Shown here: positions 9,999 to 56,411 of the stretch, piece by piece
Layout of the letters: each line of letters begins with the position of its first letter
Numbering within the stretch: the stretch's first letter is position 1
IMG/VR virus record: IMGVR_UViG_3300031576_000002
Coordinates: 1 to 64,000 of that record
Length of the DNA stretch: 64,000 nucleotides
Reading direction: 5' to 3' (one strand)
Notes under the pieces: model-generated
Seen by the model: only the letters and a program-made list of their open reading frames with translations
Databases searched by the model: none
What the model was told of the DNA's origin: nothing
Made by a program: the position numbers and the translations under genes

Positions 9999-10027
9999 AG
10001 TCTAATGAGACTGCATCCAAGTGTCAA
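9999..10027 (-). promoter_or_regulatory. Sigma70-type promoter with overlapping AGTCT-N4-AGACT palindrome
   Basis: TTGACA-17 nt-TAGACT on minus strand; palindrome 9999-10012. Confidence 0.8.
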
Positions 10028-10389
10028 GAGGGCAAACTAAGAATCCTGTCGCAGCCGTCACACCAGATTTCGTACCTACTGCCTGCCCGCGCCTTCCAGC
10101 CCTCTCCTTCCGTCTCCCCGTAGAGCGGCGCAATCGAGCGCAGGCCGCACAGCGTTCTCTGCGGTCGCCGCTCGTTCACGAGATGGCGCGCCCACATGTA
10201 GCCTTCCGCCTGCCGGATCAGGTAGCGCGCCGGCTGCTCGGGCAGGTCCACGACTCCGCACGTCGGGCACGGATACTGCGGGTCGGGCGGAAGGGATCCG
10301 ATAAAGCGAGTGCTACAGGCCAGGCAACGGAATGCCAGGAGTGGCAGGCCGCCTTCTCCAGTAACGCTCAGATCAGTCTCGCCGCGCAT
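10024..10389 (-). CDS. Hypothetical Zn-ribbon protein
   Basis: CLAC, CPTC, CDGC motifs. Confidence 0.55.
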   Translation of the reverse strand: MRGETDLSVTGEGGLPLLAFRCLACSTRFIGSLPPDPQYPCPTCGVVDLPEQPARYLIRQAEGYMWARHLVNERRPQRTLCGLRSIAPLYGETEGEGWKARAGSRYEIWCDGCDRILSLPS

Positions 10390-10400
10390 CTTCTCCCCTC

Positions 10401-10955
10401 CTAGCTACCACGCTGCTGAATAAACGCCCCGACTGCTTTGGCAACTGCAATGCTCTGTCTTGCCTTGAAGCTTACAGAATGCTCCCAAAGTGTGTTGTAC
10501 GCACCATCCCAGAAGGGGCTCAGATCCCGCACGACTTGCAAGTTTGCCCGCAGATAAGCGATCTCCTCCTCAATCTCGGCAATCCTATGCCGAGCGTTGG
10601 CTATTTCTTCTGCGAGGCTTCGCTCGGCCTGGGCGTACTGTGAGAACTTTTTCAGAAAAAAGCAGATCGCCTCAGCCGCCTCTGCCTCCTCGGGGTCCGC
10701 TTCTGCCGCTGCGGCTCGATACTCGGCACAGCGCGCACACAGGTCCCGGTGGAAATCTCCTACACTCTTTCTGTACTCGATTCCAGTCTCCGTTCGCCTC
10801 GCGTAGGCTTGCGTATATTTCCAAGACCTTACCCGTACCCACCCGGTCGAGCACGGTTCGCTCGACGAAGCCCGCCCAGACAGACGGCGGTACCGCACAC
10901 TTGTAGACTCTTCCAATGCTTTGAGCTTCTTATCTGTAATCGTCGTGTTTGCCAT
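10401..10955 (-). CDS. Hypothetical protein with coiled coil
   Basis: SD AGAGGAGAGG before ATG 10955. Confidence 0.55.
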   Translation of the reverse strand: MANTTITDKKLKALEESTSVRYRRLSGRASSSEPCSTGWVRVRSWKYTQAYARRTETGIEYRKSVGDFHRDLCARCAEYRAAAAEADPEEAEAAEAICFFLKKFSQYAQAERSLAEEIANARHRIAEIEEEIAYLRANLQVVRDLSPFWDGAYNTLWEHSVSFKARQSIAVAKAVGAFIQQRGS

Positions 10956-11136
10956 TAACACCCTCTCCTCTTTTTGTGCGCTCCTTCTGCACACGACCGT
11001 AAGCTGCTTCCGCTTGCTCCCGAGTCGTCTCGATCCCTTCTCGCGCCTGCGTAGAAATAATACAGCGGACCATCAGCTCCCGCCACTTCACGGAGTCTGC
11101 CAGAATTTCCTTGATCGAGAGACGTCTCATGCTCAC
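10930..11136 (-). CDS. Small hypothetical protein
   Basis: GTGA overlap with upstream frame. Confidence 0.5.
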   Translation of the reverse strand: MSMRRLSIKEILADSVKWRELMVRCIISTQAREGIETTREQAEAAYGRVQKERTKRGEGVNGKHDDYR

Positions 11137-11366
11137 TGTTTCCCCCCTTGCGCCACCTTCACTTTCAGGCGGCGCTTTGCGTCTTTCAAGGTGGCCCCGT
11201 ACACCACTCCTTTACTCCAAGCGCCAATCCACTTATTCGTACCGCGCAAGATCAGGACCTCTCGCGGCGATCTATGCACTTCCCCCACGAACTCTGTACG
11301 CCAGGTGCCATCCGACAGTCGTCGGTCGTAGGCGTAGTGGTACCGTCCTTCAGAGCAGCGGAACCA

Positions 11367-11840
11367 CTACAAGACAGTAGCATCCTGTTTAACTGCGTAG
11401 CCCTGGGCATTCACGATTCTTCTAGCCCGCACGATCTTCTCCTTTCTAGCGCAAGCGCTCACGCACACTCGCTTGCAACTGCGCACCGGCAAAGCGCGGA
11501 CATAGCGGGAGGTGCCCTGATGGACAAAGTTGGAGTAGTCACCGTTGAGGGCGACAAAGGCCGCCTCCGAGCCGCGCGATTCCGATGTCCAGGCCAGGAT
11601 TAGTTTTGGGGCAACTCTGGCAATCTTCTTGGCCTCCGCAAGCGTCGGAAGGCGCCAGTCAGTGTGACCACCTTCCCTGCAACCCGTGGCATAGTCCACA
11701 GCTTGCTGCCAGGTCAGATAGCGGCTTGCCCTAAGCGCCACCTGCAATGTACCGCCTCCCGTCTTCGCACCTCGCTGCTTCGTAGAGGACGTAGCGGCCT
11801 TCTCCTTCTTCCTGAGCGTATTCAAATCAATCTTTTTCAT
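11367..11840 (-). CDS. DUF1566 (Lcl C-terminal, C-type lectin fold) protein; putative DGR target 1
   Basis: TWQQAVDYA...GGHTDWRLPT..E...WTS...RALPVR motifs. Confidence 0.8.
   Translation of the reverse strand: MKKIDLNTLRKKEKAATSSTKQRGAKTGGGTLQVALRASRYLTWQQAVDYATGCREGGHTDWRLPTLAEAKKIARVAPKLILAWTSESRGSEAAFVALNGDYSNFVHQGTSRYVRALPVRSCKRVCVSACARKEKIVRARRIVNAQGYAVKQDATVL
11481..11591 (-). repeat. Putative DGR variable region VR1 (paralogous to 31776-31886)
   Basis: Identical 23-nt and 19-nt blocks shared with VR2; internal differences at codon positions 1/2 of NNY codons. Confidence 0.75.
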
Positions 11841-11957
11841 CGCTCTCCTCCGTCACTCCCTCGCCGCAGCACGGCGAAGCGGGTTCGAGTTGAATATCGT
11901 TGCCGCAGTAGCCGTGAACCTCGTAGCGTCCAATGCCGCCGTCTATTACTTCTCTTG

Positions 11958-14144
11958 TCAAACCACTGCCTCTAAGGCACAGAAACGAGAATTTCCCAGA
12001 ATGGTCAAGCGCTTCTTGGCTCGCGTCACTGCGATAAAGATCAGGTTCTTCTCCTGCTTGCGTTCCCACTCTTTCTTAGCCTTGGGGTGAGGCAACAGAC
12101 TGGGCTCCAGGATGTACACGCTATCAGCCTCAAGCCCCTTCCCGCGGTGGATACTGCTACAAATCACGCCCACGGCATCGTCCGAAAACACCTGCCCGAT
12201 CTTGTCTTCGAGATCGGCTAGTGTCATCGCACCATCCGACAACGCGATCAGGGTGTCCACCTTGTCGTCCAGAGCGTCGGTCGGGCGATCCAGCGCTTCC
12301 AGCTTGGCCGCCTCGCGCGTGTGATACTCGTTCAGCCGCGTCAAGAAGTCCACGATAGAGGTGCCGCCCAGCTTGCGAATCAGGGCGATCAGGCCAGCGC
12401 CAATATCCCTCCCCATAATCGTCGCCTTCTTACCCTGACGAATGAGGCCGAACGCGACCGAGACCAGGGGGGCATTGCACCGGCAGAGAACCATGTCCCC
12501 TGCTGCCAGCAGGTTCAGGGCCGCCTCAACTTTCGGCTCAATCCGCACCTCCCCTTCGGGAGCCGCCGCGCTGGCCTCGATCTCCGGTACAAACTGCCGG
12601 GCCAGGCGAACCACAGCTTGCGGGCACCGATACGAAATGCTAAGCGGCAGTACCTCTGCCTTCAGCTCGTTGATGAGCCGGTCCACCGCTTCCGCATCCG
12701 CTCCGCGGAACGAGTAGCATGCTTGATTCGCGTCGCCCACCGCAATGATGCGCCCATTCGGAGTCAGACTGCGCTGCAAGAGGCGGATCTGCGCCAAGTT
12801 GAGGTCTTGGCATTCGTCCACAAAGATCGTGTCATACTGCGCCACGGCCAGCTCCAGTGTCACCGGCAGCCATATCTGGTCGTCAAAATCCAGCTTCGTC
12901 GCCGTCTCAAAGTCCTTGCAGCGGTTGAGCACATCGGCCGCGATTACGATTGCCGCGTCTGCATCGCCATTCACGTCCAGTCCGTAGCGATCGATCAAAG
13001 AAATCGCTGCATCCCGCTCACGGAGGTCCGTCAAGGTCGCCTTTGCCAGAGATACCAGACGCTCCACAGAACGGGACAGCTCCTTGATCGCTTCCAAGCG
13101 CAGGTCAAGACCCCGCTCGCTCACAAGGATCTGCTTGATGAAGTCACGAATACGTCCGTTCGCGGTGTACTCGACCCGCTTCCCACCCAACGCCTTGTTG
13201 ACCGCGCCCCACCCCAGACTATTCAACGTCGAGATGTGGGCCGCCGAATCCGGGAGCCGCTTCTTGATCTCATTGGCAATCGACTTGTTAAAGGCGCAGA
13301 ATGCCACCCGTCCCTTCGCCAGCGGGAGAGCGCGCACCACGGTGGAGGTCTTGCCACTGCCGGCGGTGGCACGAATGACGACATTGCCGTGTCCATGCTC
13401 GACCGCTGCGAATACCCGCGCCTGATAGAGGCTCGGAGTGTACCCAGGCTTGCTGTACCGGGCCACCAGCTCCTCGTCCGTCAGAATGACCGGAGCCTCT
13501 TCCACCGGCTTAGCCTCGACCGAGGCCGGCGCGTTGACCTCCTCCTCGCGCACCTTCTCGATCCGGAGGCCGCCCTTGCCGGCCGCCTCGATCGCCTTGG
13601 GGTCGGTGGAGGGCGCCTTCTCGGTTGCGCGGCCCTTGCAGCCCGTGGCCTTCCACGCGGCGCAGGCGCGGAAGGTGCGCTCCGCGCCGGTCGCCTTGTC
13701 CTTGTACGCCTTGACGTAGATCGAGGCGCCACAGGTCGAGCAGGTACCGACCTCGTCCCGGATCCACTCGCGCAGGATGTTGCACTTGTCGCGCAAGCGG
13801 TCGAACAGCGCCGCCTTGGCCTGCGCCTCGTCGAGGCCGGCCGCAGCCGTCCGGTAGACACGGGGCTGCTTCTCGCGGAGGGGGACATCGTGGCGGGCGT
13901 CCACCACCACGATGCGGATGGCGTCCTCGCCGCAGTCGCGGCTAATGCCGGTACGAGCGTCGAGCGAGGAGTAGACCTTGACCTTGGCGGTCAGGATCTG
14001 CCGCTCGTAGACCAGCTCGTCACCCTGCTTGGGCGCGAGCACGAGCTTGGAGAAGGCCGCCTCGAACTCAGCCTTGGAGAAGGCAACGTAGGCCGCAGCC
14101 GGAGCATCCGGGGCGTCCTTCTTGGTAGCGCTCTTCTTCGCCAT
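11958..14144 (-). CDS. SF1 UvrD/PcrA-like helicase with N-terminal extension and Zn ribbon
   Basis: ATAGSGKT, FVDECQD, GDANQACYSFRGA, SYRCP, IHRGKGLE, FIAVTRAKK. Confidence 0.9.
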   Translation of the reverse strand: MAKKSATKKDAPDAPAAAYVAFSKAEFEAAFSKLVLAPKQGDELVYERQILTAKVKVYSSLDARTGISRDCGEDAIRIVVVDARHDVPLREKQPRVYRTAAAGLDEAQAKAALFDRLRDKCNILREWIRDEVGTCSTCGASIYVKAYKDKATGAERTFRACAAWKATGCKGRATEKAPSTDPKAIEAAGKGGLRIEKVREEEVNAPASVEAKPVEEAPVILTDEELVARYSKPGYTPSLYQARVFAAVEHGHGNVVIRATAGSGKTSTVVRALPLAKGRVAFCAFNKSIANEIKKRLPDSAAHISTLNSLGWGAVNKALGGKRVEYTANGRIRDFIKQILVSERGLDLRLEAIKELSRSVERLVSLAKATLTDLRERDAAISLIDRYGLDVNGDADAAIVIAADVLNRCKDFETATKLDFDDQIWLPVTLELAVAQYDTIFVDECQDLNLAQIRLLQRSLTPNGRIIAVGDANQACYSFRGADAEAVDRLINELKAEVLPLSISYRCPQAVVRLARQFVPEIEASAAAPEGEVRIEPKVEAALNLLAAGDMVLCRCNAPLVSVAFGLIRQGKKATIMGRDIGAGLIALIRKLGGTSIVDFLTRLNEYHTREAAKLEALDRPTDALDDKVDTLIALSDGAMTLADLEDKIGQVFSDDAVGVICSSIHRGKGLEADSVYILEPSLLPHPKAKKEWERKQEKNLIFIAVTRAKKRLTILGNSRFCALEAVV

Positions 14145-14167
14145 AATAGATTCTCCTTTCACTTAGT

Positions 14168-14196
14168 AATCTAATAAGACTGCACCCACCTGTCAA
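14168..14196 (-). promoter_or_regulatory. Sigma70-type promoter with degenerate AGTCT-N4-AGACT palindrome
   Basis: TTGACA-17 nt-TAGATT; AATCT-AATA-AGACT at 14168-14181. Confidence 0.75.
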
Positions 14197-14233
14197 GAGG
14201 CCCCCGCACTATTTTTCCGGCCCTGCCAAAATG

Positions 14234-15054: not shown

Positions 15055-15056
15055 GG

Positions 15057-19262: not shown

Positions 19263-20423
19263 TCAGCCTCCCTTTTCCGCTAACTCATTAAGTCTGCCTA
19301 CAGGCGTAGGCAGCCCGCCAATAAGGGCATAGACACGTAATGCAGCACTGAACGCGGCCCCAGTGTAGACACCCCTGTGAATTGTTACACCTTTGCGGCC
19401 CATCATTTCAGCCAATGCCGCGATACCGTACTCAACATCCTGGGCTTTCACCTTGGAAAGAACATCTGCGGAGCCCACTGCCAGAGCAGCGCCCAGCTTG
19501 GCCTTCGAGAGATCGAAGCCCTCAGCCAGCATGCCACGCTCCATGTTTTTTCGGATCGCTTCCGACAACTTGGTCGCGGAAGGATCCTTCACGTCCATGG
19601 CGCCAAACATGACCGTACCGCTACCAAGCACAGTACCCAGGTCACGGCGATCGAACGCCATGTCCGCAGGCGTAGCTGCCAAAACCGTGAACGCTTGCAG
19701 CATCGACAGCACGGCCAGATTCGGCTTCTCCCACTTCATCGTCAAAGAAAGGTTCGGCCAAATCTTCGGTATCCGGTTGTTGTCCACGACAATGAGCGGC
19801 GTCAGCTCGCCGCGATCGACCTTATCGAAGAGTGTCGTCAGAACCCTGTGCGCGTTGCGGCAAACGCCGGGCTGCTCCGTCGTCTGTGGAATCGTCACGA
19901 TTGCGCCGATTCTCGGATAAGCCGGATCAGGCCGCTCCAAGGTCTCGGTGTAGCGCTTGACCGTGTCGAAGATGTTCTGCCGGCCTTCCTTTTCAATCAT
20001 CGCGCCAGAGCCACTGCCGCCACCAGAACCGCTCGCGCAGAGTACGACCTCCACGTTTGCGCCGAGGCTGGTATGCAGCAGGTCGAAGATCGCGTCGCGC
20101 GCTTCATGGATCAAGTCGAGGCCAACATCGGGATTCTTTCCTGCGCCTCCGGTGTCTCCCGCAAGCAGCTTGCGCTCTGCGGGAAGAGCCTTGAGCTGTT
20201 CGAGGTCGCCGGGCGCGGTATTGATCGCGCAGACACGTCGCCAGCCAAGTCGCCAAGCGGTCTCCGCTAGACGGCCGCCTGCCTGGCCGATTCCTACGAA
20301 TCCAATTCGCACCGCGGACTGGAACGTATCCTCGTGCGGATCGACAACGGTTTCGATCTCCGGCAGCTCGAAACTCGCCAGCGCGTCAAGTCCCGTCTTT
20401 GGCTCAGTCATCCCGTCCCCCAT
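19263..20423 (-). CDS. Tubulin/FtsZ-superfamily GTPase (PhuZ/TubZ/CetZ-like)
   Basis: GIGQAGG, INT, GAGKN, GSGGGSGSG signature, VDNN, D..D. Confidence 0.9.
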   Translation of the reverse strand: MGDGMTEPKTGLDALASFELPEIETVVDPHEDTFQSAVRIGFVGIGQAGGRLAETAWRLGWRRVCAINTAPGDLEQLKALPAERKLLAGDTGGAGKNPDVGLDLIHEARDAIFDLLHTSLGANVEVVLCASGSGGGSGSGAMIEKEGRQNIFDTVKRYTETLERPDPAYPRIGAIVTIPQTTEQPGVCRNAHRVLTTLFDKVDRGELTPLIVVDNNRIPKIWPNLSLTMKWEKPNLAVLSMLQAFTVLAATPADMAFDRRDLGTVLGSGTVMFGAMDVKDPSATKLSEAIRKNMERGMLAEGFDLSKAKLGAALAVGSADVLSKVKAQDVEYGIAALAEMMGRKGVTIHRGVYTGAAFSAALRVYALIGGLPTPVGRLNELAEKGG

Positions 20424-43182: not shown

Positions 43183-43285
43183 GTTTACCCCTCCCCCATG
43201 CGCTTCCGCAGAACCCCTCGAAGACCCTTAATCCAGATTAACATCTCAAGGTCGAGTGTCAGTGTTGCTACCACGTCCAGGCTCT

Positions 43286-43817: not shown

Positions 43818-44174
43818 TCAAAGCGGCGTTTTTCTGGCTGCACGACCTTCCACCCCAAAGTTGTCGGGATTCCTTAGAACATGGGTGCGGTACTTCGCCA
43901 TCGCATTCATCAGGTCGCGTTCTATCGTCGCCAGCGGGTACCCCAGCAGAGAAGCGATCTCGGCAGGGCTATGGTCGCGGTCGGGATCATTCCAGTCACA
44001 GTGCGTCGGAAGCTTTCGGTTGAAATGGTCACATCTTGAAAAAGTGCAGTCTCGGTCGCCTACTCCGACCCTCCAGCGCCAGCATGGAAACCGTCGCGTC
44101 AGGTCTTCCTTGCTCACCGAGAGAAGCCAGGCTCGACAGGAGCCCCGGGTAAGTCTATGAAAAACCGCGTCCAA
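43818..44174 (-). CDS. Sigma region-4-like HTH protein with Cys cluster
   Basis: HSPAEIASLLGYPLATIERDLMNAMAK. Confidence 0.6.
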   Translation of the reverse strand: MDAVFHRLTRGSCRAWLLSVSKEDLTRRFPCWRWRVGVGDRDCTFSRCDHFNRKLPTHCDWNDPDRDHSPAEIASLLGYPLATIERDLMNAMAKYRTHVLRNPDNFGVEGRAARKTPL

Positions 44175-46990: not shown

Positions 46991-48093
46991 ATTGCCCTAG
47001 CTGTCTCTCGTATCAGCGCCAAACACTGCTCCTTCAAGTCGTCCACCGGCACCGACCAATCCTTGCGCGAGGCGAGAAACGCGATCAACTCTTCTTCCGG
47101 AGACTTGCCTAGCTGCGACAGCACCGCCCCTTGGATCTCTACTTTGCCAGGCTGTGAGCTTTCTACGAATCGCTTCTCAACCAGCAGCGTAACTTCCCGC
47201 TTGGCCGCGCTGGCCCGCAAGGCAGGAATATCCAGAGCCCGCAGTTCCGCCGGAGTGTCGCTGACCGTCAGCTTGAGGATAGTTCGCGGTACACAAGTTT
47301 GTACCGCACCCTTGACTTCGTCCGCTTGAACCGTCGCCGCCGCAAGACGGTACGGCTTCTCCAACAAGATCGGCCTTGTCTTCACGCCTTGCGACATGAT
47401 CGTAACTAAGATCCCGCCGCTATCCTCGTAGGCTTCCCCAAAGTCCTTCTGCACGAGACTGCCGGAGTAGTAAGCAGGAGTCTCGCACTTGATCCGCTGG
47501 CGCTTGTGAATGTCACCGGCCGCGACATAGTCCACGTCCAGCTTGTCGAGAATCCTTGGATCGAGTCCTTTGTCTGCGGGCATGCCTCTGTACGCAGCAC
47601 CTTGGAAGGTCTCGTGCAGCATGAGAATGATGGGCTTCTCGATCTTCTCCGGGTGAAAACCTGGCCAGTTTCGCGGCTGAAATCGCTCAGGTCCACCGTA
47701 GGGCGGGATCACAACCAGAACGAACGTCTCGAACTCCTCGACCGCTAGCGTATCGAAGACACGAAGGTGGTGGAACCTGCCCTCTACAATCTGGAGCGTC
47801 TTGAGGGTGTGGTAGCCATTCAGCTCCCGGTTCAGGTAGTCGTGGTTCCCCGGCATGACAAGCACTGGAATTTCCAACTTGTCTACTCGATCGAACCAGG
47901 CAAGCAGCGCGTCCTTCTCCTGCTGGTGCGGATGAGGGTGCTCGAAGATGTCGCCCGCTAGCAGGATCGCCTCGACGGTTTCCCGTCTCGCAACCTCGAC
48001 GATCTCATCGAGCGCGAGCATCTGCCGTTCGAGGCTTCCTGGCAGCTTGCGCTGCGCCCCGATCTGCAAATCAGCAATATGCACAAACCTCAT
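46987..48093 (-). CDS. sbcD: SbcD/Mre11/gp47-like metallophosphoesterase nuclease
   Basis: HIADLQ, AGDIF, PGNHD, AGDIH, YSGS..Q.DFGE. Confidence 0.92.
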   Translation of the reverse strand: MRFVHIADLQIGAQRKLPGSLERQMLALDEIVEVARRETVEAILLAGDIFEHPHPHQQEKDALLAWFDRVDKLEIPVLVMPGNHDYLNRELNGYHTLKTLQIVEGRFHHLRVFDTLAVEEFETFVLVVIPPYGGPERFQPRNWPGFHPEKIEKPIILMLHETFQGAAYRGMPADKGLDPRILDKLDVDYVAAGDIHKRQRIKCETPAYYSGSLVQKDFGEAYEDSGGILVTIMSQGVKTRPILLEKPYRLAAATVQADEVKGAVQTCVPRTILKLTVSDTPAELRALDIPALRASAAKREVTLLVEKRFVESSQPGKVEIQGAVLSQLGKSPEEELIAFLASRKDWSVPVDDLKEQCLALIRETARAI

Positions 48094-48362: not shown

Positions 48363-48377
48363 TTTGCCTCTGTACGC

Positions 48378-49007: not shown

Positions 49008-49054
49008 TTTGCTGCCTCCCCTTTTATCGACTCACGGTCGATTTGAGTTCTTAG

Positions 49055-49666: not shown

Positions 49667-49854
49667 GGATCTCGCTTCCCAGACGCACGTATGTCTTCGT
49701 CGATCAGATTTTCGATCTGCCTGTGCAGGTCCGCGCTGACTTGTTCAAGGTCTTCACCATCAGCGACAGTCGTTGTGATACTGGTGGAGAATTCGACGGA
49801 CTGGTAGTCAGCCGACACTCTCTTGACTACGCCCTTGCTCAGCTTCAACGGCAT
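49618..49854 (-). CDS. Small hypothetical protein
   Basis: 'SADYQSVEFSTSIT' pattern; ORF track. Confidence 0.5.
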   Translation of the reverse strand: MPLKLSKGVVKRVSADYQSVEFSTSITTTVADGEDLEQVSADLHRQIENLIDEDIRASGKRDPWIQRIVTKAFQVKSA

Positions 49855-51688
49855 GGGGTTTCTCGCGCAGGGCTCGCCGGACCTCTTTCAAAAACTCGGG
49901 ATCTTCGCTGAGCGCCTGCTTTAGCTTTTCGCGACCGATGTAGCTTCTCCCCAGCAGCGTGAGTTTTCTACGGTCGCCTTCTACTATACCGCGTGAGATT
50001 GCGGCGCGAAGAACGCCGGAAACCACGTCGATTCCAGTTTTGTAATTGAGGATGACCTCGGCCTCTCCGCCTGGAGGGGCAAACTTGTTTTTCACTACTT
50101 TGATCTTGACCGTGTGCGCGTCTGGAATTTTATCTCCGCCGGCACGACTTACCCGCACGCTGAGCGCCTTCCAGTGTTTCAGCGCTCTCCCGCCGGGCTG
50201 ATCTTCGGGACTGCCCCACATGACATTCACTTTGCTACGGAGCTGGTTGATGAATACCAACACGGTACTCGTCTTGTTAAGACGGGGAGCGATCTTCGCA
50301 AGTCCGTGCTGGACAAGGCGTGCTTGCAGGCCGGGAATCTCTTTGTCCTCGACATCTCCCGCAACGACCCGGGCAGGCGTCACGACTGCGATCGAGTCCA
50401 CCACGATCACGGCGTAGCGATCCTGGTCGATCAGCGCGTAGAGCAGATCGAAGAAGCGTTCGCCACTGGGAACGCCGTCTGAATTCTCGGGAAGGCCCTT
50501 GACCCGCACCAACCGCTTGCGCTGAATTCCAAGCGTCCGCATCCAAGTAGGAGGAGTTGCCTGCTCCAGATCGCAGTAGACACACGGTTTCTTCAAGTCC
50601 TTTTGAATAGAGCCAATCATGTGAAGCATGAGCGCCGACTTCCCTGAATTGTGAACAACGAAACCATTTGCTACATAATTGTTGAACGGGCTTGCCACCC
50701 TCAAGTCGTATGTTCGGCATTTGCCCGCTTTACGAATGACAGAAATGTGATCCTCTACTGCCACAAAACGTAGATTGTTGTGCCGTTCAAGTGCATGCTC
50801 CCTTCCATGCGCGCTGGGCGACATTACAACAAGATTTTCTAATGCGTCATTTTTACAGTCTTCGTCTAGGTGGTGTACGTGCTCTGCTTGAGATAAGAAC
50901 TTTAACCCTTCAAGCCGCCCGTCGTTAAGAAGCCGAACATACTCCTTAAACGATAGTCCGTTCAAAGCAGCTTCCACGACAGCCCTGGAACGCCTTAGCC
51001 TGCGGTAGGTGTAGCATTTGCCCGCTGTGCCAGGCACTCTCTTAGTAGGGGCGTTGGGATGGAACTTCACAAAAATGTCAATTCGACTAATAGCTGGAGT
51101 ACGCTCGCGCACACGGTACGGAGTACGATTGTGGATATAAACTGAGTCACCTACTACCAAATCGGCCAAAGCTGTATAGCACTCACCTGTCCAGAATTTG
51201 TGCTCAGGTGTAGCTTTTAGACGGTACCCCTTAAACGTCTCAACTTCTAGGCATTGCCGCACACCCGTCGAGATTACATCCACAACTCTATTTTGAAAAA
51301 TACGCCCCTCTTCGTTCACGCAAGAAGTAAAAAAGTATGAATCGACTATAGCAGAGCGCTTATACATCCCTAGTCCTGACATCGGAATCCCGTGAAAACG
51401 GTTGTACAGCCGCTCAACCGTCCCCCCTTTGCAGCTTTGACGCCGCCCTTCTGGGGTTCGCGTGCCATAGCGTATAAAAGTGCTAGCCTCCACGCAGGAT
51501 TCCGGACCCCAGGCTTCCACAATCTTGCCTTGGGGAAGGCCCCCAATTCCAGTAGCTACATCAAAATCCTCGATGCCAGTCGAGTAGACGCGGGTGTACT
51601 GATCGTCTGCCTCAAATCCTCGTCCGATGCAGGGACCGAATTTGGCCACCAGTCCGTCTAACTCGTTCTTTTTCTTTTCTTCTTTCAT
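49808..51688 (-). CDS. recA: RecA-like recombinase with an intein in the P-loop
   Basis: GIGGLPQGKIVE.WGPES/SGKS, VVDS, QARL, FINQLR, PGGRALK, KNKFAPP. Confidence 0.95.
   Translation of the reverse strand: MKEEKKKNELDGLVAKFGPCIGRGFEADDQYTRVYSTGIEDFDVATGIGGLPQGKIVEAWGPESCVEASTFIRYGTRTPEGRRQSCKGGTVERLYNRFHGIPMSGLGMYKRSAIVDSYFFTSCVNEEGRIFQNRVVDVISTGVRQCLEVETFKGYRLKATPEHKFWTGECYTALADLVVGDSVYIHNRTPYRVRERTPAISRIDIFVKFHPNAPTKRVPGTAGKCYTYRRLRRSRAVVEAALNGLSFKEYVRLLNDGRLEGLKFLSQAEHVHHLDEDCKNDALENLVVMSPSAHGREHALERHNNLRFVAVEDHISVIRKAGKCRTYDLRVASPFNNYVANGFVVHNSGKSALMLHMIGSIQKDLKKPCVYCDLEQATPPTWMRTLGIQRKRLVRVKGLPENSDGVPSGERFFDLLYALIDQDRYAVIVVDSIAVVTPARVVAGDVEDKEIPGLQARLVQHGLAKIAPRLNKTSTVLVFINQLRSKVNVMWGSPEDQPGGRALKHWKALSVRVSRAGGDKIPDAHTVKIKVVKNKFAPPGGEAEVILNYKTGIDVVSGVLRAAISRGIVEGDRRKLTLLGRSYIGREKLKQALSEDPEFLKEVRRALREKPHAVEAEQGRSQESVG
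50648..51496 (-). mobile_element. Intein with HNH endonuclease (283 aa)
   Basis: Starts CVEASTFI, ends TYDL.V...NNYVANGFVVHN/S; internal HVHHLDEDCKNDALENL. Confidence 0.92.
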
Positions 51689-54450
51689 GCAGCCTCCACA
51701 AGCTTAGGAAATAGATCGGCGTGAGCTTCGAAAAACTTCTCCGGCTTCATCATCTCGCTCAGGCTGAACCCTACTTCCATCTCAACCGGCATGGAAATAT
51801 CGAACGTCGGGTGCAGCATTCCGCGTACCTTGCTGCAAACCTTCATCGCTTTCGGTAGATCCTGGACTGCGACTTCGGAGAGGATCGCGTCGTGAATGTG
51901 CAGGCAGATCCTCGCATCAAGTTTCGTCTTTTTGTATGCCCTGAGCAGGTTCACCGCACGAGTTGTGTTCTCATCGTGACAGGCACCCTGAATGGGGGAG
52001 TTGGAGGCTTCTCGATCTTGCTTCGTCACCCAGTCTACTTTCCGGCCTCGAATGCCCCGAATGACGCGGATACGTCCGTGAAGGGAGCGAACGAACCCGG
52101 TCGTCCTCGCAAAAGCACGGACGTTCGCTACGAACTGGTGCGCCTGCCGGTAACGACCCCAGAAGGCTTCCTGGATCTTCTTCGCCACTTCCAGTGGGAT
52201 CCCTACCTGCATGGCTAGAGTTTCTGGCCCCCCGCCATAGATCGTCTCGAACACGCCGGTCTTGGCTTTCTCCCGTAGATCGCCGCCTGTCTCTTTGTCT
52301 TTCTGGATTTCCTCTTCTGTCTTCTCAAATGCAACCGAGGCAACGTAGCGGTGAACATCGAACCCGGTGCGAATGTCTTCCTTCATTATCTCGTCATTGG
52401 CGTAGATTGCCAGCAGCCGAAACTCGGCTTGCGCGTAGTCCTCTTTGATGAAGGCATAGCCCGGCCTAGCCCTGAATATCGATTTGATCTCTTTGGCCCT
52501 TGGGCCACGATTGGGAATGTTCTGGAGATTGATGGGACGCTTCGAGGACCATCTTCCCGTCTCCGTGCCGATGACGAAGTATTCGGCGCGTAGCATTCCA
52601 TCCTTGCCGATATTTTTGAGAACGCTATTTTTGAGATACGAGATGTAAGAGAGGAGCTGGCGAGTACGCGACAGCTCGTTCACAACGGGATGATCGTATT
52701 TTTCCAAGACCTTCTTGCCGGTCGCTCGCGACCCTTTCTTCGTCATGTGTAGAACAGGAAGCTCCAGAATATCGAACAGCAGCGTGTGCATGTGCTTGGT
52801 GGAGCGGCAGTTGAACGTGACAGGCCGCAGCGGCTTTCGTGGCTGAAAGGGTTTCTTTCCCTGCGCCTCGCGCTGAGCCTCGGTCTTCGCGTCGCGCCTT
52901 TCCGTCTCGATCGTGCCAACTCTGCGAATTTCTTCTAGCTCGAAGAGCTTCGAATTTACCTGCGTGACTTCTTTCTGGTACTGGTCGATCAGATCGAGAA
53001 CTCGGTCTTTGTCGATGTAGACCCCGCCCTCCATCATGTGATCGGCGAGTTGAAGGACGGGCGCCATGATCTGAAAATAGAACTCTTCCAGGCCGAGACC
53101 TACGGGGCTGGGAACTCTGATGTCAAAGTTGCGGATCCGTCCGAGCAGGCTATCGACGACTCGCCACTCCGCGTCCGCATCGGCTGCGGCGTAGCGGTAC
53201 AGGGTTTCTTCGGGCAGCAGCGCATAGCTACTTCCTCGGATCAGCTTGGACTTTGCGCGATCGAGCGGCTCTTCGTAGTTTCCAAGCTCGGTCCAGTGGA
53301 AGCTGAGTTCCTTGAGGCCGTGCCCTCCCTCTTGGTCGATCAAGTGAGAGAGAACCATGCCGTCGATATGAAAGCCCTTGACTCTGATGCCGAGGTCGTG
53401 GCGAAGGATGCGGCAATCGAACAGGCGGGCATTGTGCCCGATCTTCTTGATCGTGGGGTCTTCCAGGAGTCTCTTGAGGGTGCCGTGCAAAACTGCTTCT
53501 TGCGCAGGAGTCCAAAACGGCTGCAAGGCTTGCCCAGGAGTCGCAACCTGGTGCCGCCAGGGAATCGTCGCGGCTTTGCCTTTGGCCCAGCAAAAGCTGA
53601 TGCAGAGAATCTTATCTTCGCGTGCAACGGGATAGCCACGCCGCAAGGCCGTATCTGGCGGCGAGGTTTCCAAGTCGAACGAGATCGTGTCGCAGCCTTC
53701 CAGGAGTTCGAGGAGATTCTTTGCGGCTTTGAATGTGTCCGCGATGCGATAGTCCGGTAGAGCACTGGGGACTTCGATGCCGGCGTAGCTTGCCATCATC
53801 CGAATCGCGTTCGTAAAGCTGATGGGATCCAGCCATTCCAGCGGATCCTGCTTCTCTCGCCTCAGGTAGGCAGCGGGGTGATATGCCGGAATCAGGTAGG
53901 GGCCTCCTCCCTGCCATTGGCGTTTTCGATCGGAAAGGAACACGTCTCCGACTACGTCCTGCATCACGACCTGCTTTTTGAATCCGAACATCCGCAGCAC
54001 TTCACGAGTTGCAGTTCCGCCGAGAAGGCCAATCACACGAGGACGGTAGCGAGCAATATCTTTCCAGAGGTAGTCGAGGCAGGGCTCGTAGATTGCTCGG
54101 TTAGGTACACGGTTGAGGGGAAGCTTGCAGCGAATCGTGTTGGCAACCCAGACCTGCTTGGCTAGACCGAGCTGGTCGAGGTGCTGATTCAGGAACTGTC
54201 CGGCTGGACCTACGAACGGGGTATCGAGCGCTACTTCGTAGTCGCCGGGAGCTTCTCCCACGAGCATGATGGGGTTGCGAGGATCGCCACGGTTTCCCAC
54301 GAGAGTACGGCGGACGACTTTTGGCTCTCCTCCATCCTCGGCACACTTTACGAGCGAGGTCTCCCACAGGGAGCACTTCGTACAGCGGACCTTCTCACCC
54401 GGCACAGCTTGAGCGAGAAGATCTTCGAGAAAGCCAACTTGGTCGTTCAC
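51685..54450 (-). CDS. polA: Family A DNA polymerase with N-terminal family-4 uracil-DNA glycosylase domain and 3'-5' exonuclease
   Basis: CTKC...GEAPG..E...PFVG.AG...RC...HP; FDLET, GHN..FD, YAAADA; QNIP, DYAQAEFR, KT..F..IYG, IHD. Confidence 0.95.
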   Translation of the reverse strand: MNDQVGFLEDLLAQAVPGEKVRCTKCSLWETSLVKCAEDGGEPKVVRRTLVGNRGDPRNPIMLVGEAPGDYEVALDTPFVGPAGQFLNQHLDQLGLAKQVWVANTIRCKLPLNRVPNRAIYEPCLDYLWKDIARYRPRVIGLLGGTATREVLRMFGFKKQVVMQDVVGDVFLSDRKRQWQGGGPYLIPAYHPAAYLRREKQDPLEWLDPISFTNAIRMMASYAGIEVPSALPDYRIADTFKAAKNLLELLEGCDTISFDLETSPPDTALRRGYPVAREDKILCISFCWAKGKAATIPWRHQVATPGQALQPFWTPAQEAVLHGTLKRLLEDPTIKKIGHNARLFDCRILRHDLGIRVKGFHIDGMVLSHLIDQEGGHGLKELSFHWTELGNYEEPLDRAKSKLIRGSSYALLPEETLYRYAAADADAEWRVVDSLLGRIRNFDIRVPSPVGLGLEEFYFQIMAPVLQLADHMMEGGVYIDKDRVLDLIDQYQKEVTQVNSKLFELEEIRRVGTIETERRDAKTEAQREAQGKKPFQPRKPLRPVTFNCRSTKHMHTLLFDILELPVLHMTKKGSRATGKKVLEKYDHPVVNELSRTRQLLSYISYLKNSVLKNIGKDGMLRAEYFVIGTETGRWSSKRPINLQNIPNRGPRAKEIKSIFRARPGYAFIKEDYAQAEFRLLAIYANDEIMKEDIRTGFDVHRYVASVAFEKTEEEIQKDKETGGDLREKAKTGVFETIYGGGPETLAMQVGIPLEVAKKIQEAFWGRYRQAHQFVANVRAFARTTGFVRSLHGRIRVIRGIRGRKVDWVTKQDREASNSPIQGACHDENTTRAVNLLRAYKKTKLDARICLHIHDAILSEVAVQDLPKAMKVCSKVRGMLHPTFDISMPVEMEVGFSLSEMMKPEKFFEAHADLFPKLVEAA

Positions 54451-54953
54451 GAGTCTTGATCGTCGCTTTTTTCGGCAGGAGCTACATGGAACATGTCGCC
54501 CTTCTCTACAATACCCCGAGTCCGGACGAGGTGTGAGAGAGCCAGCTTGAGACGGACATTCAGGATCTTGTGAGCAGACTCAGGAAGCTTCGCTCCAAAG
54601 ACTCCGAACAGGTCGGAGAAGCTCCGCGGCTTGCTTGAGATGGATTCGAGCACTGAAGTGCGGAACACCTCTGGATCTGAAAGATCATCTTTTGCGACTA
54701 CCGGCCTATCAACCTTTTCCGAAGGAGTCGAAACGACCTTGGACGTCTTGACTGGCTTAGGTAGTGAAGCCGCAGTCTCGTCCTTGATGAGAGGAATCAG
54801 AGGGTAGGTACCTGGCACGAGAACTTCGTTCTCCGTGTGTAGATTCAAGACGGCTGTCTTAGAACCTTCCTGTCGAAGCACCTTCAACTCTTTCCCATAC
54901 TTTGAGAGGTAGTAGCTACCTACCTGAGCATTTTTTGCAAGCACCTCCGCCAT
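54447..54953 (-). CDS. Hypothetical protein with C-terminal winged-helix-like region
   Basis: SD GGAGG before ATG 54953. Confidence 0.55.
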   Translation of the reverse strand: MAEVLAKNAQVGSYYLSKYGKELKVLRQEGSKTAVLNLHTENEVLVPGTYPLIPLIKDETAASLPKPVKTSKVVSTPSEKVDRPVVAKDDLSDPEVFRTSVLESISSKPRSFSDLFGVFGAKLPESAHKILNVRLKLALSHLVRTRGIVEKGDMFHVAPAEKSDDQDS

Positions 54954-54986
54954 GTCCGATCCTCCAATAGCCAGGGTTATCTGACC

Positions 54987-55028
54987 TAGTTGTGGTACCA
55001 CAACTAGCTAGCATTATACTACCTATCT
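54987..55028 (-). promoter_or_regulatory. 42-bp promoter+palindrome element, copy 1
   Basis: Minus strand AGATAGGTAGTATAAT then palindrome; 36/42 identical to 61621-61662. Confidence 0.8.
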
Positions 55029-55045
55029 AACGGTTTTCTCATTGC

Positions 55046-55059
55046 AGTCTTATAAGACT
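55046..55059. promoter_or_regulatory. AGTCT-TATA-AGACT operator-like palindrome
   Basis: Perfect match to the motif at 9999, 56324 and 56383. Confidence 0.6.
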
Positions 55060-55400
55060 TCCGATATTTTCTTTGTACCTACCACTTTTCTTACACATCT
55101 CTGTAAGATCAAAAGCATTTAAGCTTATGGACACTGGTCAAGTGTCCCTCTTGGAGATCCTATTACGTGCCGTACAAGAAGGCAAGAGTAAGGCGGACTC
55201 GAAAAGAAGCTCGCAAAAAGAATCACCATCAACCAGGTCGAGTAAAGGGGGATCATTAAAGGGCCGAGCATATCTTAGCTCTAGCCGGAGATACTATGAC
55301 CTACTTGTTACGTAGTGGCGCGACGTTTAGATGGACGACTTTACGTGCCCCACTTGTTGACTCGACTTTTATTGTACCACGGAAGATCGACCACACACTT

Positions 55401-55562
55401 AAAGCTGCGTTGAAAAAAGGGCCAGAATCGGCAAGTTTTTGCATTAACAGACGTTTTTCAACTTAAACTCCCGTTGGAAAAACAGCCTGTTTCTGCGTAG
55501 GTCCACGTAAAACTGCCGTTGGATTCGTGAACTGTCGTTGCAGATTTGATAAACTGGCGTTG
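55401..55562. repeat. Iteron-like 12-bp direct repeats (plus strand, consensus near AAACTGnCGTTG)
   Basis: 55401 AAAGCTGCGTTG, 55465 AAACTCCCGTTG, 55510 AAACTGCCGTTG, 55529 GAACTGTCGTTG, 55551 AAACTGGCGTTG. Confidence 0.55.
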
Positions 55563-55620
55563 GAATTCTATCAAGCCTTGTTGGACGAGCAAGCGCTCGC
55601 AAAGGCTCGACGAGATGCCC

Positions 55621-55654
55621 AAAAAAGAAGGGAGCCGCCTTTCAGTGGCTCCCT
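55621..55654 (-). terminator. Rho-independent terminator after the sigma factor gene
   Basis: Minus strand GGGAGCC-actgaaaggc-GGCTCCC followed by TTCTTTTTT. Confidence 0.8.
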
Positions 55655-55678
55655 AAAACTACTAATACAGATTGATAT

Positions 55679-56290
55679 TTACTGGCTGACCGAAGCGCGC
55701 ATCTTTGCGAATACCCGCTCCTCGAACCTCTGGCACGTCTCACTGTGGATTCCCAGGCGGCGGGCGATACGAAGGGTCGTACCATCCTCCTCGACCCACG
55801 CCTCCACAAAACTACGCTCGGTCGGTGTGAGCACTGCCAGCGCGTGCTGGACAAGCTCCCGCCGTTCTGCGCCTGCGAAGGCGGTAGCGGGCGTGCTCAG
55901 GTGCAGCGAGTGATGCTCGGGAGCAGGTCCAAAGTCGTGCGGGATTTCCCGCCCTGCGCCCCTTTTGAAAGACTTGTACCGGTTGCTCAGAATGTTCTTG
56001 GTCTTGAGCTTGAGCGCGGTGGCAGGCTCGAAGCCGTACGGTTGCGCGCCCTTCTTCTGGAACATCGCCCAGAGGCCCAGCAGGCACTCCTGGGAGAGAT
56101 CCTCCCAGTCTTCAGGACGACCGCTGCCGTGAGAGGACTTCCACGAAGCGGTCTTGGTGTACTTCTCGAAGCTCTTGAAGAGAGCTTCTGCCGCTACCTT
56201 CTTGACTCGTATACGACCCTTCTTCTTGATCGACGGAACGAACGCCTGCGCTGCGAGTGCCGAGATCCTCTCGGCGTGAGCTGCTGCCAT
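55679..56290 (-). CDS. RNA polymerase sigma factor (sigma70/ECF-like)
   Basis: Region 2 'WEDLSQECLLGLW'; region 4 'LTPTER...LRIARRLGIHSETC'. Confidence 0.8.
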   Translation of the reverse strand: MAAAHAERISALAAQAFVPSIKKKGRIRVKKVAAEALFKSFEKYTKTASWKSSHGSGRPEDWEDLSQECLLGLWAMFQKKGAQPYGFEPATALKLKTKNILSNRYKSFKRGAGREIPHDFGPAPEHHSLHLSTPATAFAGAERRELVQHALAVLTPTERSFVEAWVEEDGTTLRIARRLGIHSETCQRFEERVFAKMRASVSQ

Positions 56291-56318
56291 GCGATTCCCC
56301 TTTCAGCGGAAGGCCCGC

Positions 56319-56411
56319 ATAGTAGTCTTATCAGACTTGCTTGTCAAGCCCCTGGCTCGACGAGCTGTTCGCCTTGGGGTACAGTCTAATGAGACTGTAG
56401 TAGTCTGTCAA
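56319..56411 (-). promoter_or_regulatory. Tandem sigma70 promoters, each with an AGTCT-N4-AGACT palindrome
   Basis: TTGACA-17-TACTAT (56319-56347, palindrome 56324-56337) and TTGACA-17-TAGACT (56383-56411, palindrome 56383-56396). Confidence 0.8.

What the first reader, a model, noticed from the sequence alone, without database searches (positions are those of the whole stretch)
9999..56411. Phage regulon: AGTCT-N4-AGACT palindrome built into near-consensus sigma70 promoters
Five copies (9999, 14168 degenerate, 55046, 56324, 56383). Four overlap the -10/spacer of TTGACA-N17 promoters driving the GHKL operon, the helicase operon and, in tandem, the phage sigma factor. The fifth is upstream of the polymerase operon. 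The motif does not match the LexA boxes I recall. Inference: one repressor gates early genes and the sigma cascade, suggesting a controlled lytic switch or carrier state. Candidate regulators are the HTH proteins at 43286 and 43818, or a gene outside the window.
Basis: partly seen in the sequence, partly recalled or inferred. Interest (0 to 1): 0.65.

Follow-up and report, generated by a model that had tools for sequence, protein, structure and literature searches.

The report
Palindromic operator inside phage early promoters
An orphan 205-kb phage from a cave metagenome carries a 14-bp palindrome inside its few host-type promoters, including two ahead of its own sigma-factor gene; this looks like a repressor binding site that switches early genes off, an ordinary kind of phage control with a new sequence and an unidentified binding protein.

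Summary
AGTCT-N4-AGACT occurs 4 times exactly (0.07 expected) and once with one mismatch. All copies are intergenic and lie in the first 64 kb of a 205-kb virus record. On the coding (minus) strand, four copies sit inside TTGACA-N17-TAnnnT promoters. These promoters precede an ECF-like sigma gene (two in tandem, monocistronic, own terminator), a UvrD-helicase operon and a GHKL-like ATPase operon. In three promoters the right half-site is part of the -10 hexamer. In the fourth the palindrome is shifted 5 bp. The fifth copy stands alone, about 46 bp upstream of a TATAAT promoter with a poor -35 ahead of the PolA operon.

The dyad symmetry, fixed spacing, conserved centre (nATn), variable flanks and shifted or isolated copies favour a dimeric repressor's operator over a promoter-intrinsic feature.

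A second promoter class (GTGyGkAAw-N16-GGTATAGTA, 9-13 copies at 121-197 kb) lacks the palindrome and is probably read by the phage sigma.

The binding protein is unknown. The only Pfam-significant Cro/CI-type HTH gene lies at 121 kb in a class-II unit, which suggests feedback shut-off. The genome has no integrase and no S24 repressor, and no host regulon was found, so the "lytic switch or carrier state" reading is unsupported. No relatives exist for footprinting. This is a new member of a known kind, of moderate interest.

The parts
9999..10012 (.). Operator copy O1 (minus strand AGTCTcatTAGACT). Its right half is part of the -10 hexamer of P1.
9999..10027 (-). Promoter P1: TTGACA-N17-TAGACT. 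An ATG lies 7 nt after the -10, at 9991, so the transcript may be leaderless. The stop codon of the upstream gene lies inside the -35.
9746..9991 (-). Doubtful 81-aa Cys-rich ORF directly behind P1. If it is not coding, this stretch is a 229-nt leader of the GHKL-like gene.
   Evidence: coding score about 0; no family hit
7963..9762 (-). 599-aa GHKL-like ATPase gene with Bergerat-fold motifs and the Shine-Dalgarno sequence AGAGGAGG.
   Evidence: (sacsin/Hsp90-like ATP-binding domain, E 6e-7, below cut-off)
14168..14181 (.). Operator copy O2 with one mismatch (minus strand AGTCTtatTAGATT). The mismatch keeps the -10 as TAnnnT.
14168..14196 (-). Promoter P2: TTGACA-N17-TAGATT, followed by the Shine-Dalgarno sequence AAGGAG and an ATG at 14144.
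11958..14144 (-). UvrD-type helicase gene (728 aa) with an N-terminal zinc-finger extension.
56383..56396 (.). Operator copy O5. It extends to an 18-bp dyad, ACAGTCTcattAGACTGT. A third half-site, AGACT, abuts the -35.
56383..56411 (-). Promoter P5: TTGACA-N17-TAGACT, the distal promoter of the sigma gene.
56324..56337 (.). Operator copy O4 (minus strand AGTCTgatAAGACT). Relative to the -35 it is shifted 5 bp upstream and ends at the first base of the -10.
56319..56347 (-). Promoter P4: TTGACA-N17-TACTAT, the proximal promoter of the sigma gene.
55679..56290 (-). Divergent ECF-like sigma factor gene (203 aa).
55621..55653 (-). Intrinsic terminator after the sigma gene: GGGAGCC/GGCTCCC hairpin plus a U-run. 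It makes the sigma gene a monocistronic unit.
55046..55059 (.). Isolated operator copy O3 (AGTCTtataAGACT) with no -35 of its own. Its centre lies about 46 bp upstream of the start predicted for the promoter below.
55013..55042 (-). Candidate promoter of the PolA operon: ATGAGA-N18-TATAAT, with a poor -35.
51685..54953 (-). 168-aa gene (54447-54953) and the UDG-exonuclease-PolA gene (51685-54450), the first genes of the polymerase operon.

Best explanation
The palindrome (consensus rcAGTCTyATwAGACTry, 14-18 bp) is most likely the operator of a dimeric helix-turn-helix repressor, probably encoded by the phage. It is embedded in the phage's few promoters of the host sigma-70 type.

Proposed mechanism (inferred):
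- On infection, host RNA polymerase reads P1, P2, P4 and P5. It transcribes the GHKL-like operon, the helicase operon and the phage's own ECF-like sigma gene.
- The phage sigma then reads a second promoter class (GTGyGkAAw-N16-GGTATAGTA) at 121-197 kb.
- A repressor bound to the palindrome covers about -20 to -7 in P1, P2 and P5, and about -25 to -12 in P4. This blocks polymerase and shuts off early transcription, the sigma gene included.
- The isolated copy, centred about 46 bp upstream of a TATAAT promoter with a poor -35 ahead of the PolA operon, may instead help or tune that promoter.

Shown here: the motif, its statistics, its position in the promoters, the two promoter classes, and the sigma gene with its terminator.

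Inferred: that a protein binds, that it represses, and the timing.

The best single candidate, held with low confidence, is the 80-aa Cro/CI-type HTH protein at about 121 kb. It lies in a class-II transcription unit, which would make a negative feedback loop.
For: Statistics:
- 4 exact copies against 0.07 expected.
- Only spacing N4 is enriched.
- All copies are intergenic.
- It is one of only two enriched inverted repeats in the 205 kb.

Anatomy:
- 4 of the 5 strong TTGACA-N17-TAnnnT promoters on the coding strand carry it, and the fifth carries a degenerate copy.
- The spacer between the -35 and the palindrome varies (cttggatgc, ggtgggtgc, gactactac), while both half-sites and the central AT are kept.
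- P5 and P1 share only the palindrome plus one base, 15 nt in all.
- The left half is the exact reverse complement of the -10 part. RNA polymerase contacts give no reason for that symmetry.
- In P4 the palindrome is shifted 5 bp relative to the -35, and at 55046 it has no -35 at all.
- Half-site centres are 9 bp apart, as in Cro/CI-type 14-bp operators (my knowledge).

Wider setting:
- The second promoter class has no palindrome. GTATAGTA occurs 15 times on the minus strand against 1 on the plus strand; box plus -10 occurs 9 against 0.
- The sigma identity rests on several weak but concordant hits.
- No phage RNA polymerase was found.
- An XRE HTH gene passes Pfam (E 7e-10). Its best NCBIfam match is the phage RstR repressor family. 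It sits behind a class-II-type -10 and downstream of a full class-II promoter at 122433.
Against: - No binding data exist, and no expression data: no RNA run holds the phage.
- No relatives are close enough for footprinting. The best polymerase match is 41% identical on an 8-kb contig, whose syntenic intergenic regions lack the motif.
- There are only five or six sites, and P1 and P2 are 87% identical over 38 nt, so they may be duplicates.
- The XRE gene has no palindrome near it, so nothing links it specifically to the motif.
- Several other HTH proteins exist: a MarR-like gene at about 120.6 kb, and faint HTH hits at 43.9, 186.0 and 193.3 kb.
- The host is unknown, so a host repressor cannot be excluded.
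Confidence: 0.5

Rival explanations
1. A host-encoded repressor binds the palindrome and keeps the early genes and the sigma gene silent until a host signal arrives. That would give a dormant or carrier state.
For: - The operators sit on exactly the promoters that host polymerase would read first, and doubly on the sigma gene.
- Phages are known that borrow host LexA for such control, such as GIL01 and CTX-phi (my knowledge).
- A TubZ/PhuZ-like tubulin is present, and some plasmid prophages use such proteins for partition (my knowledge).
Against: - The 205 kb have no integrase and no S24 peptidase.
- The motif has 0 hits in 10 genomes of seven phyla and 0 in 151 Deinococcota genomes. It has single hits in 3 of 151 Actinomycetota genomes, no more than the control pattern.
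- The motif matches no LexA box or other global-regulator box known to me.
- The true host is unknown, so this test is incomplete.
Confidence: 0.15
2. There is no dedicated binding protein. The conserved block is simply part of a duplicated or optimised early-promoter module, and the dyad symmetry is incidental to the -10 sequence TAGACT.
For: - The right half-site is the -10 itself in three promoters.
- P1 and P2 are 87% identical over 38 nt, which is consistent with duplication.
- Early promoters of large phages such as T4 are often conserved well beyond the two hexamers (my knowledge).
Against: - The left half lies at -20 to -16, where sigma-70 polymerase makes no base-specific contacts that I know of, and no TG extended -10 is present.
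- The same 14-mer is shifted by 5 bp in P4 and occurs without a -35 at 55046.
- P5 shares only the palindrome with P1.
- An exact reverse-complement relation of two pentamers in 4 sites at a single spacing is not expected by chance.
Confidence: 0.12
3. The protein that binds the dyad has two functions. It represses P1, P2, P4 and P5, and it activates the PolA-operon promoter with the poor -35 from the upstream copy at 55046. This would switch the phage from early to replication genes, in the manner of phi29 p4 or lambda CI at PRM. This is a sub-variant of the best explanation.
For: - The isolated copy is centred about 46 bp upstream of the start predicted for ATGAGA-N18-TATAAT.
- The sigma gene ends in a terminator, so the PolA operon needs its own promoter.
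Against: - It rests on a single site, and the promoter and its start are only predicted.
- A centre near -46 is not a classical activator position.
- The same TATAAT lies in the 5' arm of a conserved hairpin element that recurs elsewhere without a palindrome.
Confidence: 0.15
4. The palindrome serves another DNA transaction: a hairpin promoter for a virion RNA polymerase as in N4, or a nuclease, methylase or recombination site.
For: - A 5-bp stem with a 4-nt loop could extrude as a small hairpin.
- Copies cluster near replication genes and near a candidate origin with three iterons.
Against: - No T7/N4-type or multisubunit RNA polymerase was detected.
- Co-occurrence with perfect TTGACA-N17-TAnnnT promoters is explained better by host polymerase.
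- There are only five sites in 205 kb and none in coding DNA.
Confidence: 0.04

Closest known systems
Cro/CI-type operators of lambdoid phages (for example the 14-bp operators of phage 434)
   Same: - A 14-18 bp dyad with half-site centres about 9 bp apart.
- Several copies overlapping the -10 or spacer of early promoters.
- A small HTH_3 protein is encoded by the phage.
   Different: - There is no divergent repressor/cro gene pair at the operators, no tripartite OR/OL arrangement, no S24 autocleavage domain and no integrase.
- The sequence is unrelated.
- The candidate HTH gene lies about 65 kb away.
SPO1-type temporal cascade: host sigma-A early promoters, then a phage sigma (gp28), then new promoter classes
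   Same: - Early promoters have the host consensus.
- The phage sigma gene is itself an early gene.
- A distinct phage-specific promoter class sits elsewhere in the genome.
   Different: - To my knowledge SPO1 early promoters carry no embedded dyad operator, and early shut-off there uses other proteins.
- Here the sigma is a small ECF-like orphan with only 2 weak relatives among 1.8 billion representatives.
C-boxes of restriction-modification controller (C) proteins, which are about 80-aa XRE HTH proteins
   Same: - The same tetranucleotides, GACT and AGTC, are used.
- The operators overlap a promoter.
- The regulator is about 80 aa and of the XRE type (PMC2647307).
   Different: - The C-box is GACT-N3-AGTC, twice, joined by TGTA. 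Here the order is AGTC...GACT with 6 bp between the tetranucleotides, as a single dyad.
- There is no adjacent restriction-modification gene pair.
phi29 p4 and lambda CI at PRM: one protein represses early promoters and activates another
   Same: Operator copies overlap core promoters, and one copy lies upstream of a promoter with a poor -35.
   Different: The activating role rests on a single, predicted site, and there is no sequence or protein homology.
LexA/SOS boxes used by phages such as GIL01, CTX-phi and coliphage 186
   Same: A 5-4-5 dyad geometry like the Gram-positive CGAAC-N4-GTTCG box, overlapping phage promoters.
   Different: - The sequence does not match any LexA box known to me.
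- The motif is at background level in 312 sampled genomes.

Membership tests
Sigma-70 (housekeeping) type promoter | -35 TTGACA, a 16-18 bp spacer and -10 TAnnnT, on the coding strand just upstream of a gene | tested here: met
   P1, P2, P4 and P5 each have 6 of 6 in the -35, a 17-bp spacer and a TAnnnT -10. In 54400-56900 there are 5 such sites against 0.7 expected.
Sigma-70 (housekeeping) type promoter | Transcription starts 6-8 nt after the -10 and depends on the host holoenzyme | not testable with these tools
   No RNA run holds the phage, and the host is unknown.
Repressor operator of the Cro/CI (HTH dimer) kind | Dyad symmetry with fixed spacing, repeated at several promoters, beyond chance | tested here: met
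Repressor operator of the Cro/CI (HTH dimer) kind | Overlap with the core promoter, so that a bound protein excludes polymerase | tested here: met
   The dyad spans about -20 to -7 in P1, P2 and P5, and about -25 to -12 in P4.
Repressor operator of the Cro/CI (HTH dimer) kind | A cognate DNA-binding protein that binds the site | not testable with these tools
   Candidates exist: an XRE protein with E 7e-10, a MarR-like protein and others. The complex predictor was unavailable and in any case does not model DNA.
Repressor operator of the Cro/CI (HTH dimer) kind | Conservation of the site in related genomes (phylogenetic footprint) | tested here: inconclusive
   No close relatives were found. 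The one syntenic 8-kb fragment, at 41% polymerase identity, lacks the motif.
Temperate switch (lysogeny module) | An integrase or other maintenance gene together with a CI-type (S24) repressor | tested here: not met
   There is no Phage_integrase match and no Peptidase_S24 match in the 205 kb. Serine recombinases and ParAB were not searched.
LexA/SOS box or other host global-regulator box | The same motif enriched at promoters in the host genome | tested here: inconclusive
   There are 0 hits in 10 genomes of seven phyla, 0 in 151 Deinococcota genomes, and single hits in 3 of 151 Actinomycetota genomes, no more than the control pattern. The true host is unknown.
C-box of restriction-modification controller proteins | GACT-N3-AGTC, twice, separated by a conserved 4-bp spacer, upstream of a C gene | tested here: not met
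   The consensus comes from PMC2647307. Here the arrangement is AGTCT-N4-AGACT, and no spacing other than N4 is enriched.
N4-type hairpin promoter | A phage-encoded virion RNA polymerase, and hairpin promoters without host consensus hexamers | tested here: not met
   No RNA_pol (PF00940) match was found, though the controls for that family did not ring either. The sites do have perfect host-type hexamers.
Phage sigma cascade (SPO1-like) | A phage-encoded sigma factor | tested here: met
   All hits are below curated cut-offs but agree:
- Sigma70_r4, E 1e-4.
- phrog_1740, E 2e-5.
- Sigma70_r2, E 6e-3.
- TIGR02937 sigma70-ECF, E 3e-7 over residues 35-198.
- ESM Atlas neighbours are ECF sigma clusters, score 0.97, with r2-like and r4-like halves.
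Phage sigma cascade (SPO1-like) | A distinct promoter class read by the phage sigma | tested here: inconclusive
   The class exists and is strand-specific. That the phage sigma reads it is an inference.

The most novel reading that the evidence does not exclude
An orphan jumbo phage runs a closed feedback circuit. Host polymerase reads five operator-bearing promoters, one product of which is a phage ECF-like sigma. That sigma switches on a Cro-like repressor from a phage-specific promoter class. The repressor then shuts the sigma gene and the other early operons through the AGTCT-N4-AGACT dyad, and helps the polymerase operon from an upstream copy next to a candidate iteron origin. An alternative, equally unexcluded novel reading is that a host factor holds these promoters shut, so that a jumbo phage without an integrase can stay dormant.
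Probability: 0.2. Interest if true: 0.55.

Novelty: new member of a known kind. Interest (0 to 1): 0.38.

Why it matters
Regulatory circuits of uncultured jumbo phages are almost unknown. Here the sequence alone yields a small, testable wiring diagram:
- five host-type promoters, each carrying an operator;
- a phage sigma gene under double control;
- a second promoter class of at least 9 copies.

If the repressor is identified, the pair of an 18-bp operator and a small HTH protein would be a compact orthogonal switch. It would also show how a phage that depends on a sigma factor times its early shut-off. The mechanism itself (a repressor over the -10, a sigma cascade) is classical, so the value lies in annotating an orphan lineage rather than in a new principle.

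Tried and rejected
Searches for relatives, for footprinting:
- No DNA match among 50,697 phage records.
- No close relative in IMG/VR by sigma, polymerase or MarR-like protein. The XRE protein found only a 31% identical match.
- The 5.8-billion-protein search gave polymerase relatives at 41% and 30% identity on contigs of 8 kb or less, and none for sigma.
- A full HMMER scan of 1.8 billion representatives gave 2 weak sigma hits.
- The syntenic 8-kb contig L005 has distant homologues of the sigma-like gene and the 168-aa gene, but no AGTCT dyad.

Pattern scan of IMG/VR with promoter plus dyad: 8 hits in unrelated low-GC phages, which I take to be about chance level.

Host inference:
- TnpB homologues reach at most 49% identity and are spread over many phyla, so the host stays unresolved.

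Host-regulon scans were negative or at control level.

Other checks:
- A literature search by motif words returned noise, apart from the C-box paper. The C-box was rejected because its arrangement differs.
- Rfam found nothing in the window.
- RNA evidence: no RNA run holds the phage.

Considered and rejected:
- An RNA hairpin role for the dyad. In P1, P2 and P5 it lies upstream of the predicted start, and the stem has only 5 bp.
- A MerR-type activator site. The spacers are the optimal 17 bp, not 19-20.
- Divergent promoters. There are no plus-strand genes.
- An extended -10. There is no TG at -15/-14.

Full report
What the window is. The 64-kb window is the first third of a 205,227-bp IMG/VR virus record assembled from a cave metagenome. 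The two ends of the record overlap by 227 bp with one mismatch. The genome is therefore probably complete and circularly permuted or terminally redundant, although it is flagged linear. By a simple codon-usage gene call, almost every gene lies on the minus strand.

Gene content of the window:
- a UDG-exonuclease-PolA fusion, a DnaB-like helicase, a primase zinc ribbon and a UvrD helicase;
- a RecA with an intein;
- Rad50- and Mre11-like genes, a TubZ/PhuZ-like tubulin and a LAGLIDADG intein protein;
- glycosyltransferases and a TnpB.

The phage is an orphan. It has no DNA match among 50,697 phage records. The best polymerase relatives are 41% and 30% identical, on contigs of 8 kb or less. The sigma-like protein has only two weak relatives among 1.8 billion representatives.

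Check of the observation.
- AGTCT-N4-AGACT occurs exactly at 9999, 55046, 56324 and 56383. Shuffles expect 0.07, and none of 100 reached 4.
- The copy at 14168 has one mismatch.
- There are no further exact copies in the 205 kb.
- Spacers of 0-12 bp between the two pentamers give 4 hits at N4 and 0-1 at every other spacing, with about 0.16 expected.
- All copies are intergenic.
- A genome-wide scan for inverted repeats finds only two enriched families. This is one; the other is an unrelated long hairpin.

Anatomy on the coding strand.
- P1: TTGACA-N17-TAGACT, 10027-9999.
- P2: TTGACA-N17-TAGATT, 14196-14168.
- P5: TTGACA-N17-TAGACT, 56411-56383.
- P4: TTGACA-N17-TACTAT, 56347-56319.

In P1, P2 and P5 the right half-site AGACT (AGATT in P2) is the last five bases of the -10 hexamer. 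The left half-site then lies in the spacer at about -20 to -16. In P4 the same 14-mer sits 5 bp further upstream and ends at the first T of the -10.

Allowing one mismatch in the -35, only nine such promoters exist in intergenic DNA on the coding strand. The five with a perfect TTGACA and a 17-bp spacer are P1, P2, P4, P5 and one at record position 154,982. That last one carries a degenerate dyad (AGGCGcataAGACT) in the P4 position.

What is conserved, and what is not:
- The nine bases between the -35 and the dyad differ among P1, P2 and P5.
- Both half-sites and the central AT (nATn) are kept.
- One or two flanking bases extend the symmetry. In P5 the dyad is ACAGTCT-N4-AGACTGT.
- P5 and P1 share only 15 nt, the dyad plus one base. 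P1 and P2 are 87% identical over 38 nt.

Genes controlled.
- P5 and P4 stand in tandem before a 203-aa gene (55679-56290). Several weak but concordant results mark it as a divergent ECF-like sigma:
  - Sigma70_r4, E 1e-4;
  - phrog_1740, E 2e-5;
  - Sigma70_r2, E 6e-3;
  - a faint match to M. tuberculosis SigK in the PDB, E 0.31;
  - TIGR02937 sigma70-ECF, E 3e-7 over residues 35-198;
  - ESM Atlas neighbours that are ECF sigma clusters, score 0.97, with r2-like and r4-like structural halves.
- The sigma gene is followed by a hairpin of -17.7 kcal/mol and a U-run. It is therefore a monocistronic unit under two operator-bearing promoters.
- P2 precedes the UvrD helicase.
- P1 precedes a doubtful 81-aa Cys-rich ORF that would be leaderless (coding score about 0). 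Next comes a 599-aa protein with Bergerat-fold motifs and a subthreshold sacsin/Hsp90-type ATP-binding domain.
- The fifth copy (55046-55059) lies in a 725-bp, 45% GC gap without convincing ORFs, between the sigma terminator and the PolA operon. It has no -35 of its own. It ends 27 bp upstream of a perfect TATAAT whose -35 is poor (ATGAGA, N18). Its centre is therefore near -46.

A second promoter class. Searching intergenic k-mers turned up GTATAGTA, with 15 copies on the minus strand and 1 on the plus strand. In 9 cases it is preceded at about 16 bp by a box GTGyGkAAw; the plus strand has none. These sites lie at 121-197 kb, often directly before an ATG (leaderless starts), and none has the dyad. 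No T7-type or multisubunit RNA polymerase was detected. The simplest reading is a cascade: host polymerase reads the TTGACA/TAGACT promoters, and the phage sigma reads the second class. That assignment is an inference.

Why an operator rather than just a promoter.
- RNA polymerase has no known need for AGTCT at -20 to -16, and there is no TG extended -10.
- The conserved spacer block is the exact reverse complement of the -10 part.
- The spacing is unique.
- The block moves by half a helical turn in P4 and occurs without a promoter at 55046.
- A 14-18 bp dyad with half-site centres 9 bp apart is the usual target of an HTH dimer (my knowledge).
- A protein sitting there would cover the -10 and spacer, and so repress.
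- The spacers are 17 bp, so MerR-type activation is unlikely.

Who binds is not known.
- The 205 kb contain one HTH gene that passes Pfam's threshold. It encodes an 80-aa XRE protein at about 121 kb: HTH_3, E 7e-10, with a best NCBIfam match to the phage RstR repressor family, E 3e-6.
- That gene sits directly behind a class-II-type -10 and 1.3 kb downstream of a full class-II promoter. A MarR-like winged-helix gene follows it.
- If this protein binds the dyad, the circuit is a negative feedback loop: early promoters, then sigma, then repressor, which shuts the early promoters. Nothing links this protein specifically to the motif. I put about 0.2 on it.
- Other faint HTH hits lie at 43.9, 85.4, 186.0 and 193.3 kb.
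ORF 43818-44174 has only a faint r4-like HTH.

Lytic switch or carrier state. No tyrosine integrase and no S24 peptidase is present. Serine recombinases and partition genes were not searched. A host regulator was tested as far as possible without knowing the host:
- TnpB homologues do not resolve the host.
- AGTCTnATnAGACT has 0 hits in 10 genomes of seven phyla.
- It has 0 hits in 151 Deinococcota genomes.
- It has single hits in 3 of 151 Actinomycetota genomes, no more than the control pattern.

This does not exclude a host factor. It gives no support for one either.

Comparison with known systems.
- The design works like Cro/CI operators over early promoters. The two promoter classes resemble the SPO1 cascade.
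- The dyad is not a C-box of restriction-modification controller proteins. That consensus is GACT-N3-AGTC, twice, joined by TGTA (PMC2647307). The tetranucleotides are the same but the arrangement is different.
- It is not a LexA box known to me.
- It is not an N4-type hairpin promoter.

Comparative support could not be obtained. The one syntenic relative, L005, has primase, a sigma-like gene, a homologue of the 168-aa gene, polymerase and RecA. Its intergenic regions hold other inverted repeats, not this dyad. An IMG/VR scan for promoter plus dyad found only unrelated low-GC phages, which I take to be about chance level.

Verdict. The operator-in-promoter reading is the best explanation (about 0.5). 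A phage-encoded repressor for early shut-off is more likely than a host-controlled dormancy switch. It is a new sequence instance of a classical mechanism in an orphan jumbo phage.

Noticed in passing
Record positions 121,195-197,117 (outside the window). Weaker copies lie in the window at 5065, 39127, 49989 and 61586.: A second, strand-specific promoter class: GTGyGkAAw-N16-GGTATAGTA. GTATAGTA occurs 15 times on the minus strand and once on the plus strand. The box plus -10 occurs 9 times against 0. Many copies lie 5-7 nt before an ATG, so the mRNAs would be leaderless. The phage sigma probably reads this class.
   Followed up: partly
window 54961-55032 and 61595-61666; record 126281-126352, about 156823-156895 and 201281-201352: Five copies of a long hairpin of about 65 nt: GATAGG..CCTAGTTGTGG-loop-CCACAACTAGG..CCTATC. 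The middle stems differ between copies but stay paired. Fold energies range from -20 to -44 kcal/mol. Most copies lie in 5' leaders just before a ribosome site. The element may be an RNase III-type processing site or a translational operator. One copy lies 14 bp from the dyad at 55046.
   Followed up: partly
window 55464-55565: Three direct repeats, TCCAACGssAGTTT on the minus strand, spaced 41-45 bp apart and found nowhere else in the 205 kb. They lie in a 725-bp, 45% GC non-coding gap between the sigma/primase/helicase genes and the polymerase operon. They are candidate origin iterons.
   Followed up: partly
window 2747-3919 (minus strand); record about 146.7-147.9 kb and 160,088-161,260 (plus strand): Three paralogous IS605-type TnpB (OrfB, Cas12f-like) genes in one phage genome. 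The best bacterial homologues are at most 49% identical and spread over many phyla.
   Followed up: partly
window 49808-51688 and 21112-24396: The RecA gene is interrupted by an intein with an HNH-like segment. A 1094-aa protein of unknown family carries a LAGLIDADG intein.
   Followed up: no
window 19263-20423: A tubulin/FtsZ-family GTPase with a TubZ-like C-terminal domain, so a PhuZ/TubZ-like protein. No phage RNA polymerase was found. The phage is therefore probably not a nucleus-forming chimallivirus.
   Followed up: no
record 1-227 and 205,001-205,227: The two ends of the record overlap by 227 bp with one mismatch. The genome is probably complete and circular or terminally redundant, although it is classed as linear and 85% complete.
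   Followed up: yes
window 43185-43747: Coding potential switches frame near 43500 between two overlapping ORFs, 43286-43747 and 43185-43616. This could be a frameshift, a sequencing error or two short overlapping genes.
   Followed up: partly
window 39098-39114 and 61562-61578; also 37891-37908 and 61537-61554: Short conserved blocks follow a GTATAGT box (GGGCTTGCCTCAAAATT.. and CTCTGAGGCAAAGCCAGT) and form a small hairpin. They may be a shared leader or a small RNA.
   Followed up: no
record 104,529-104,630: A 12-bp tandem repeat of about 8 units (GGAAGAGTCCAT) inside a coding region.
   Followed up: no
window 47714-47794: ARAGORN calls an 81-nt tRNA-Arg(TCG) here, but Rfam finds no tRNA at its gathering score.
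   Followed up: no
   Followed up: no
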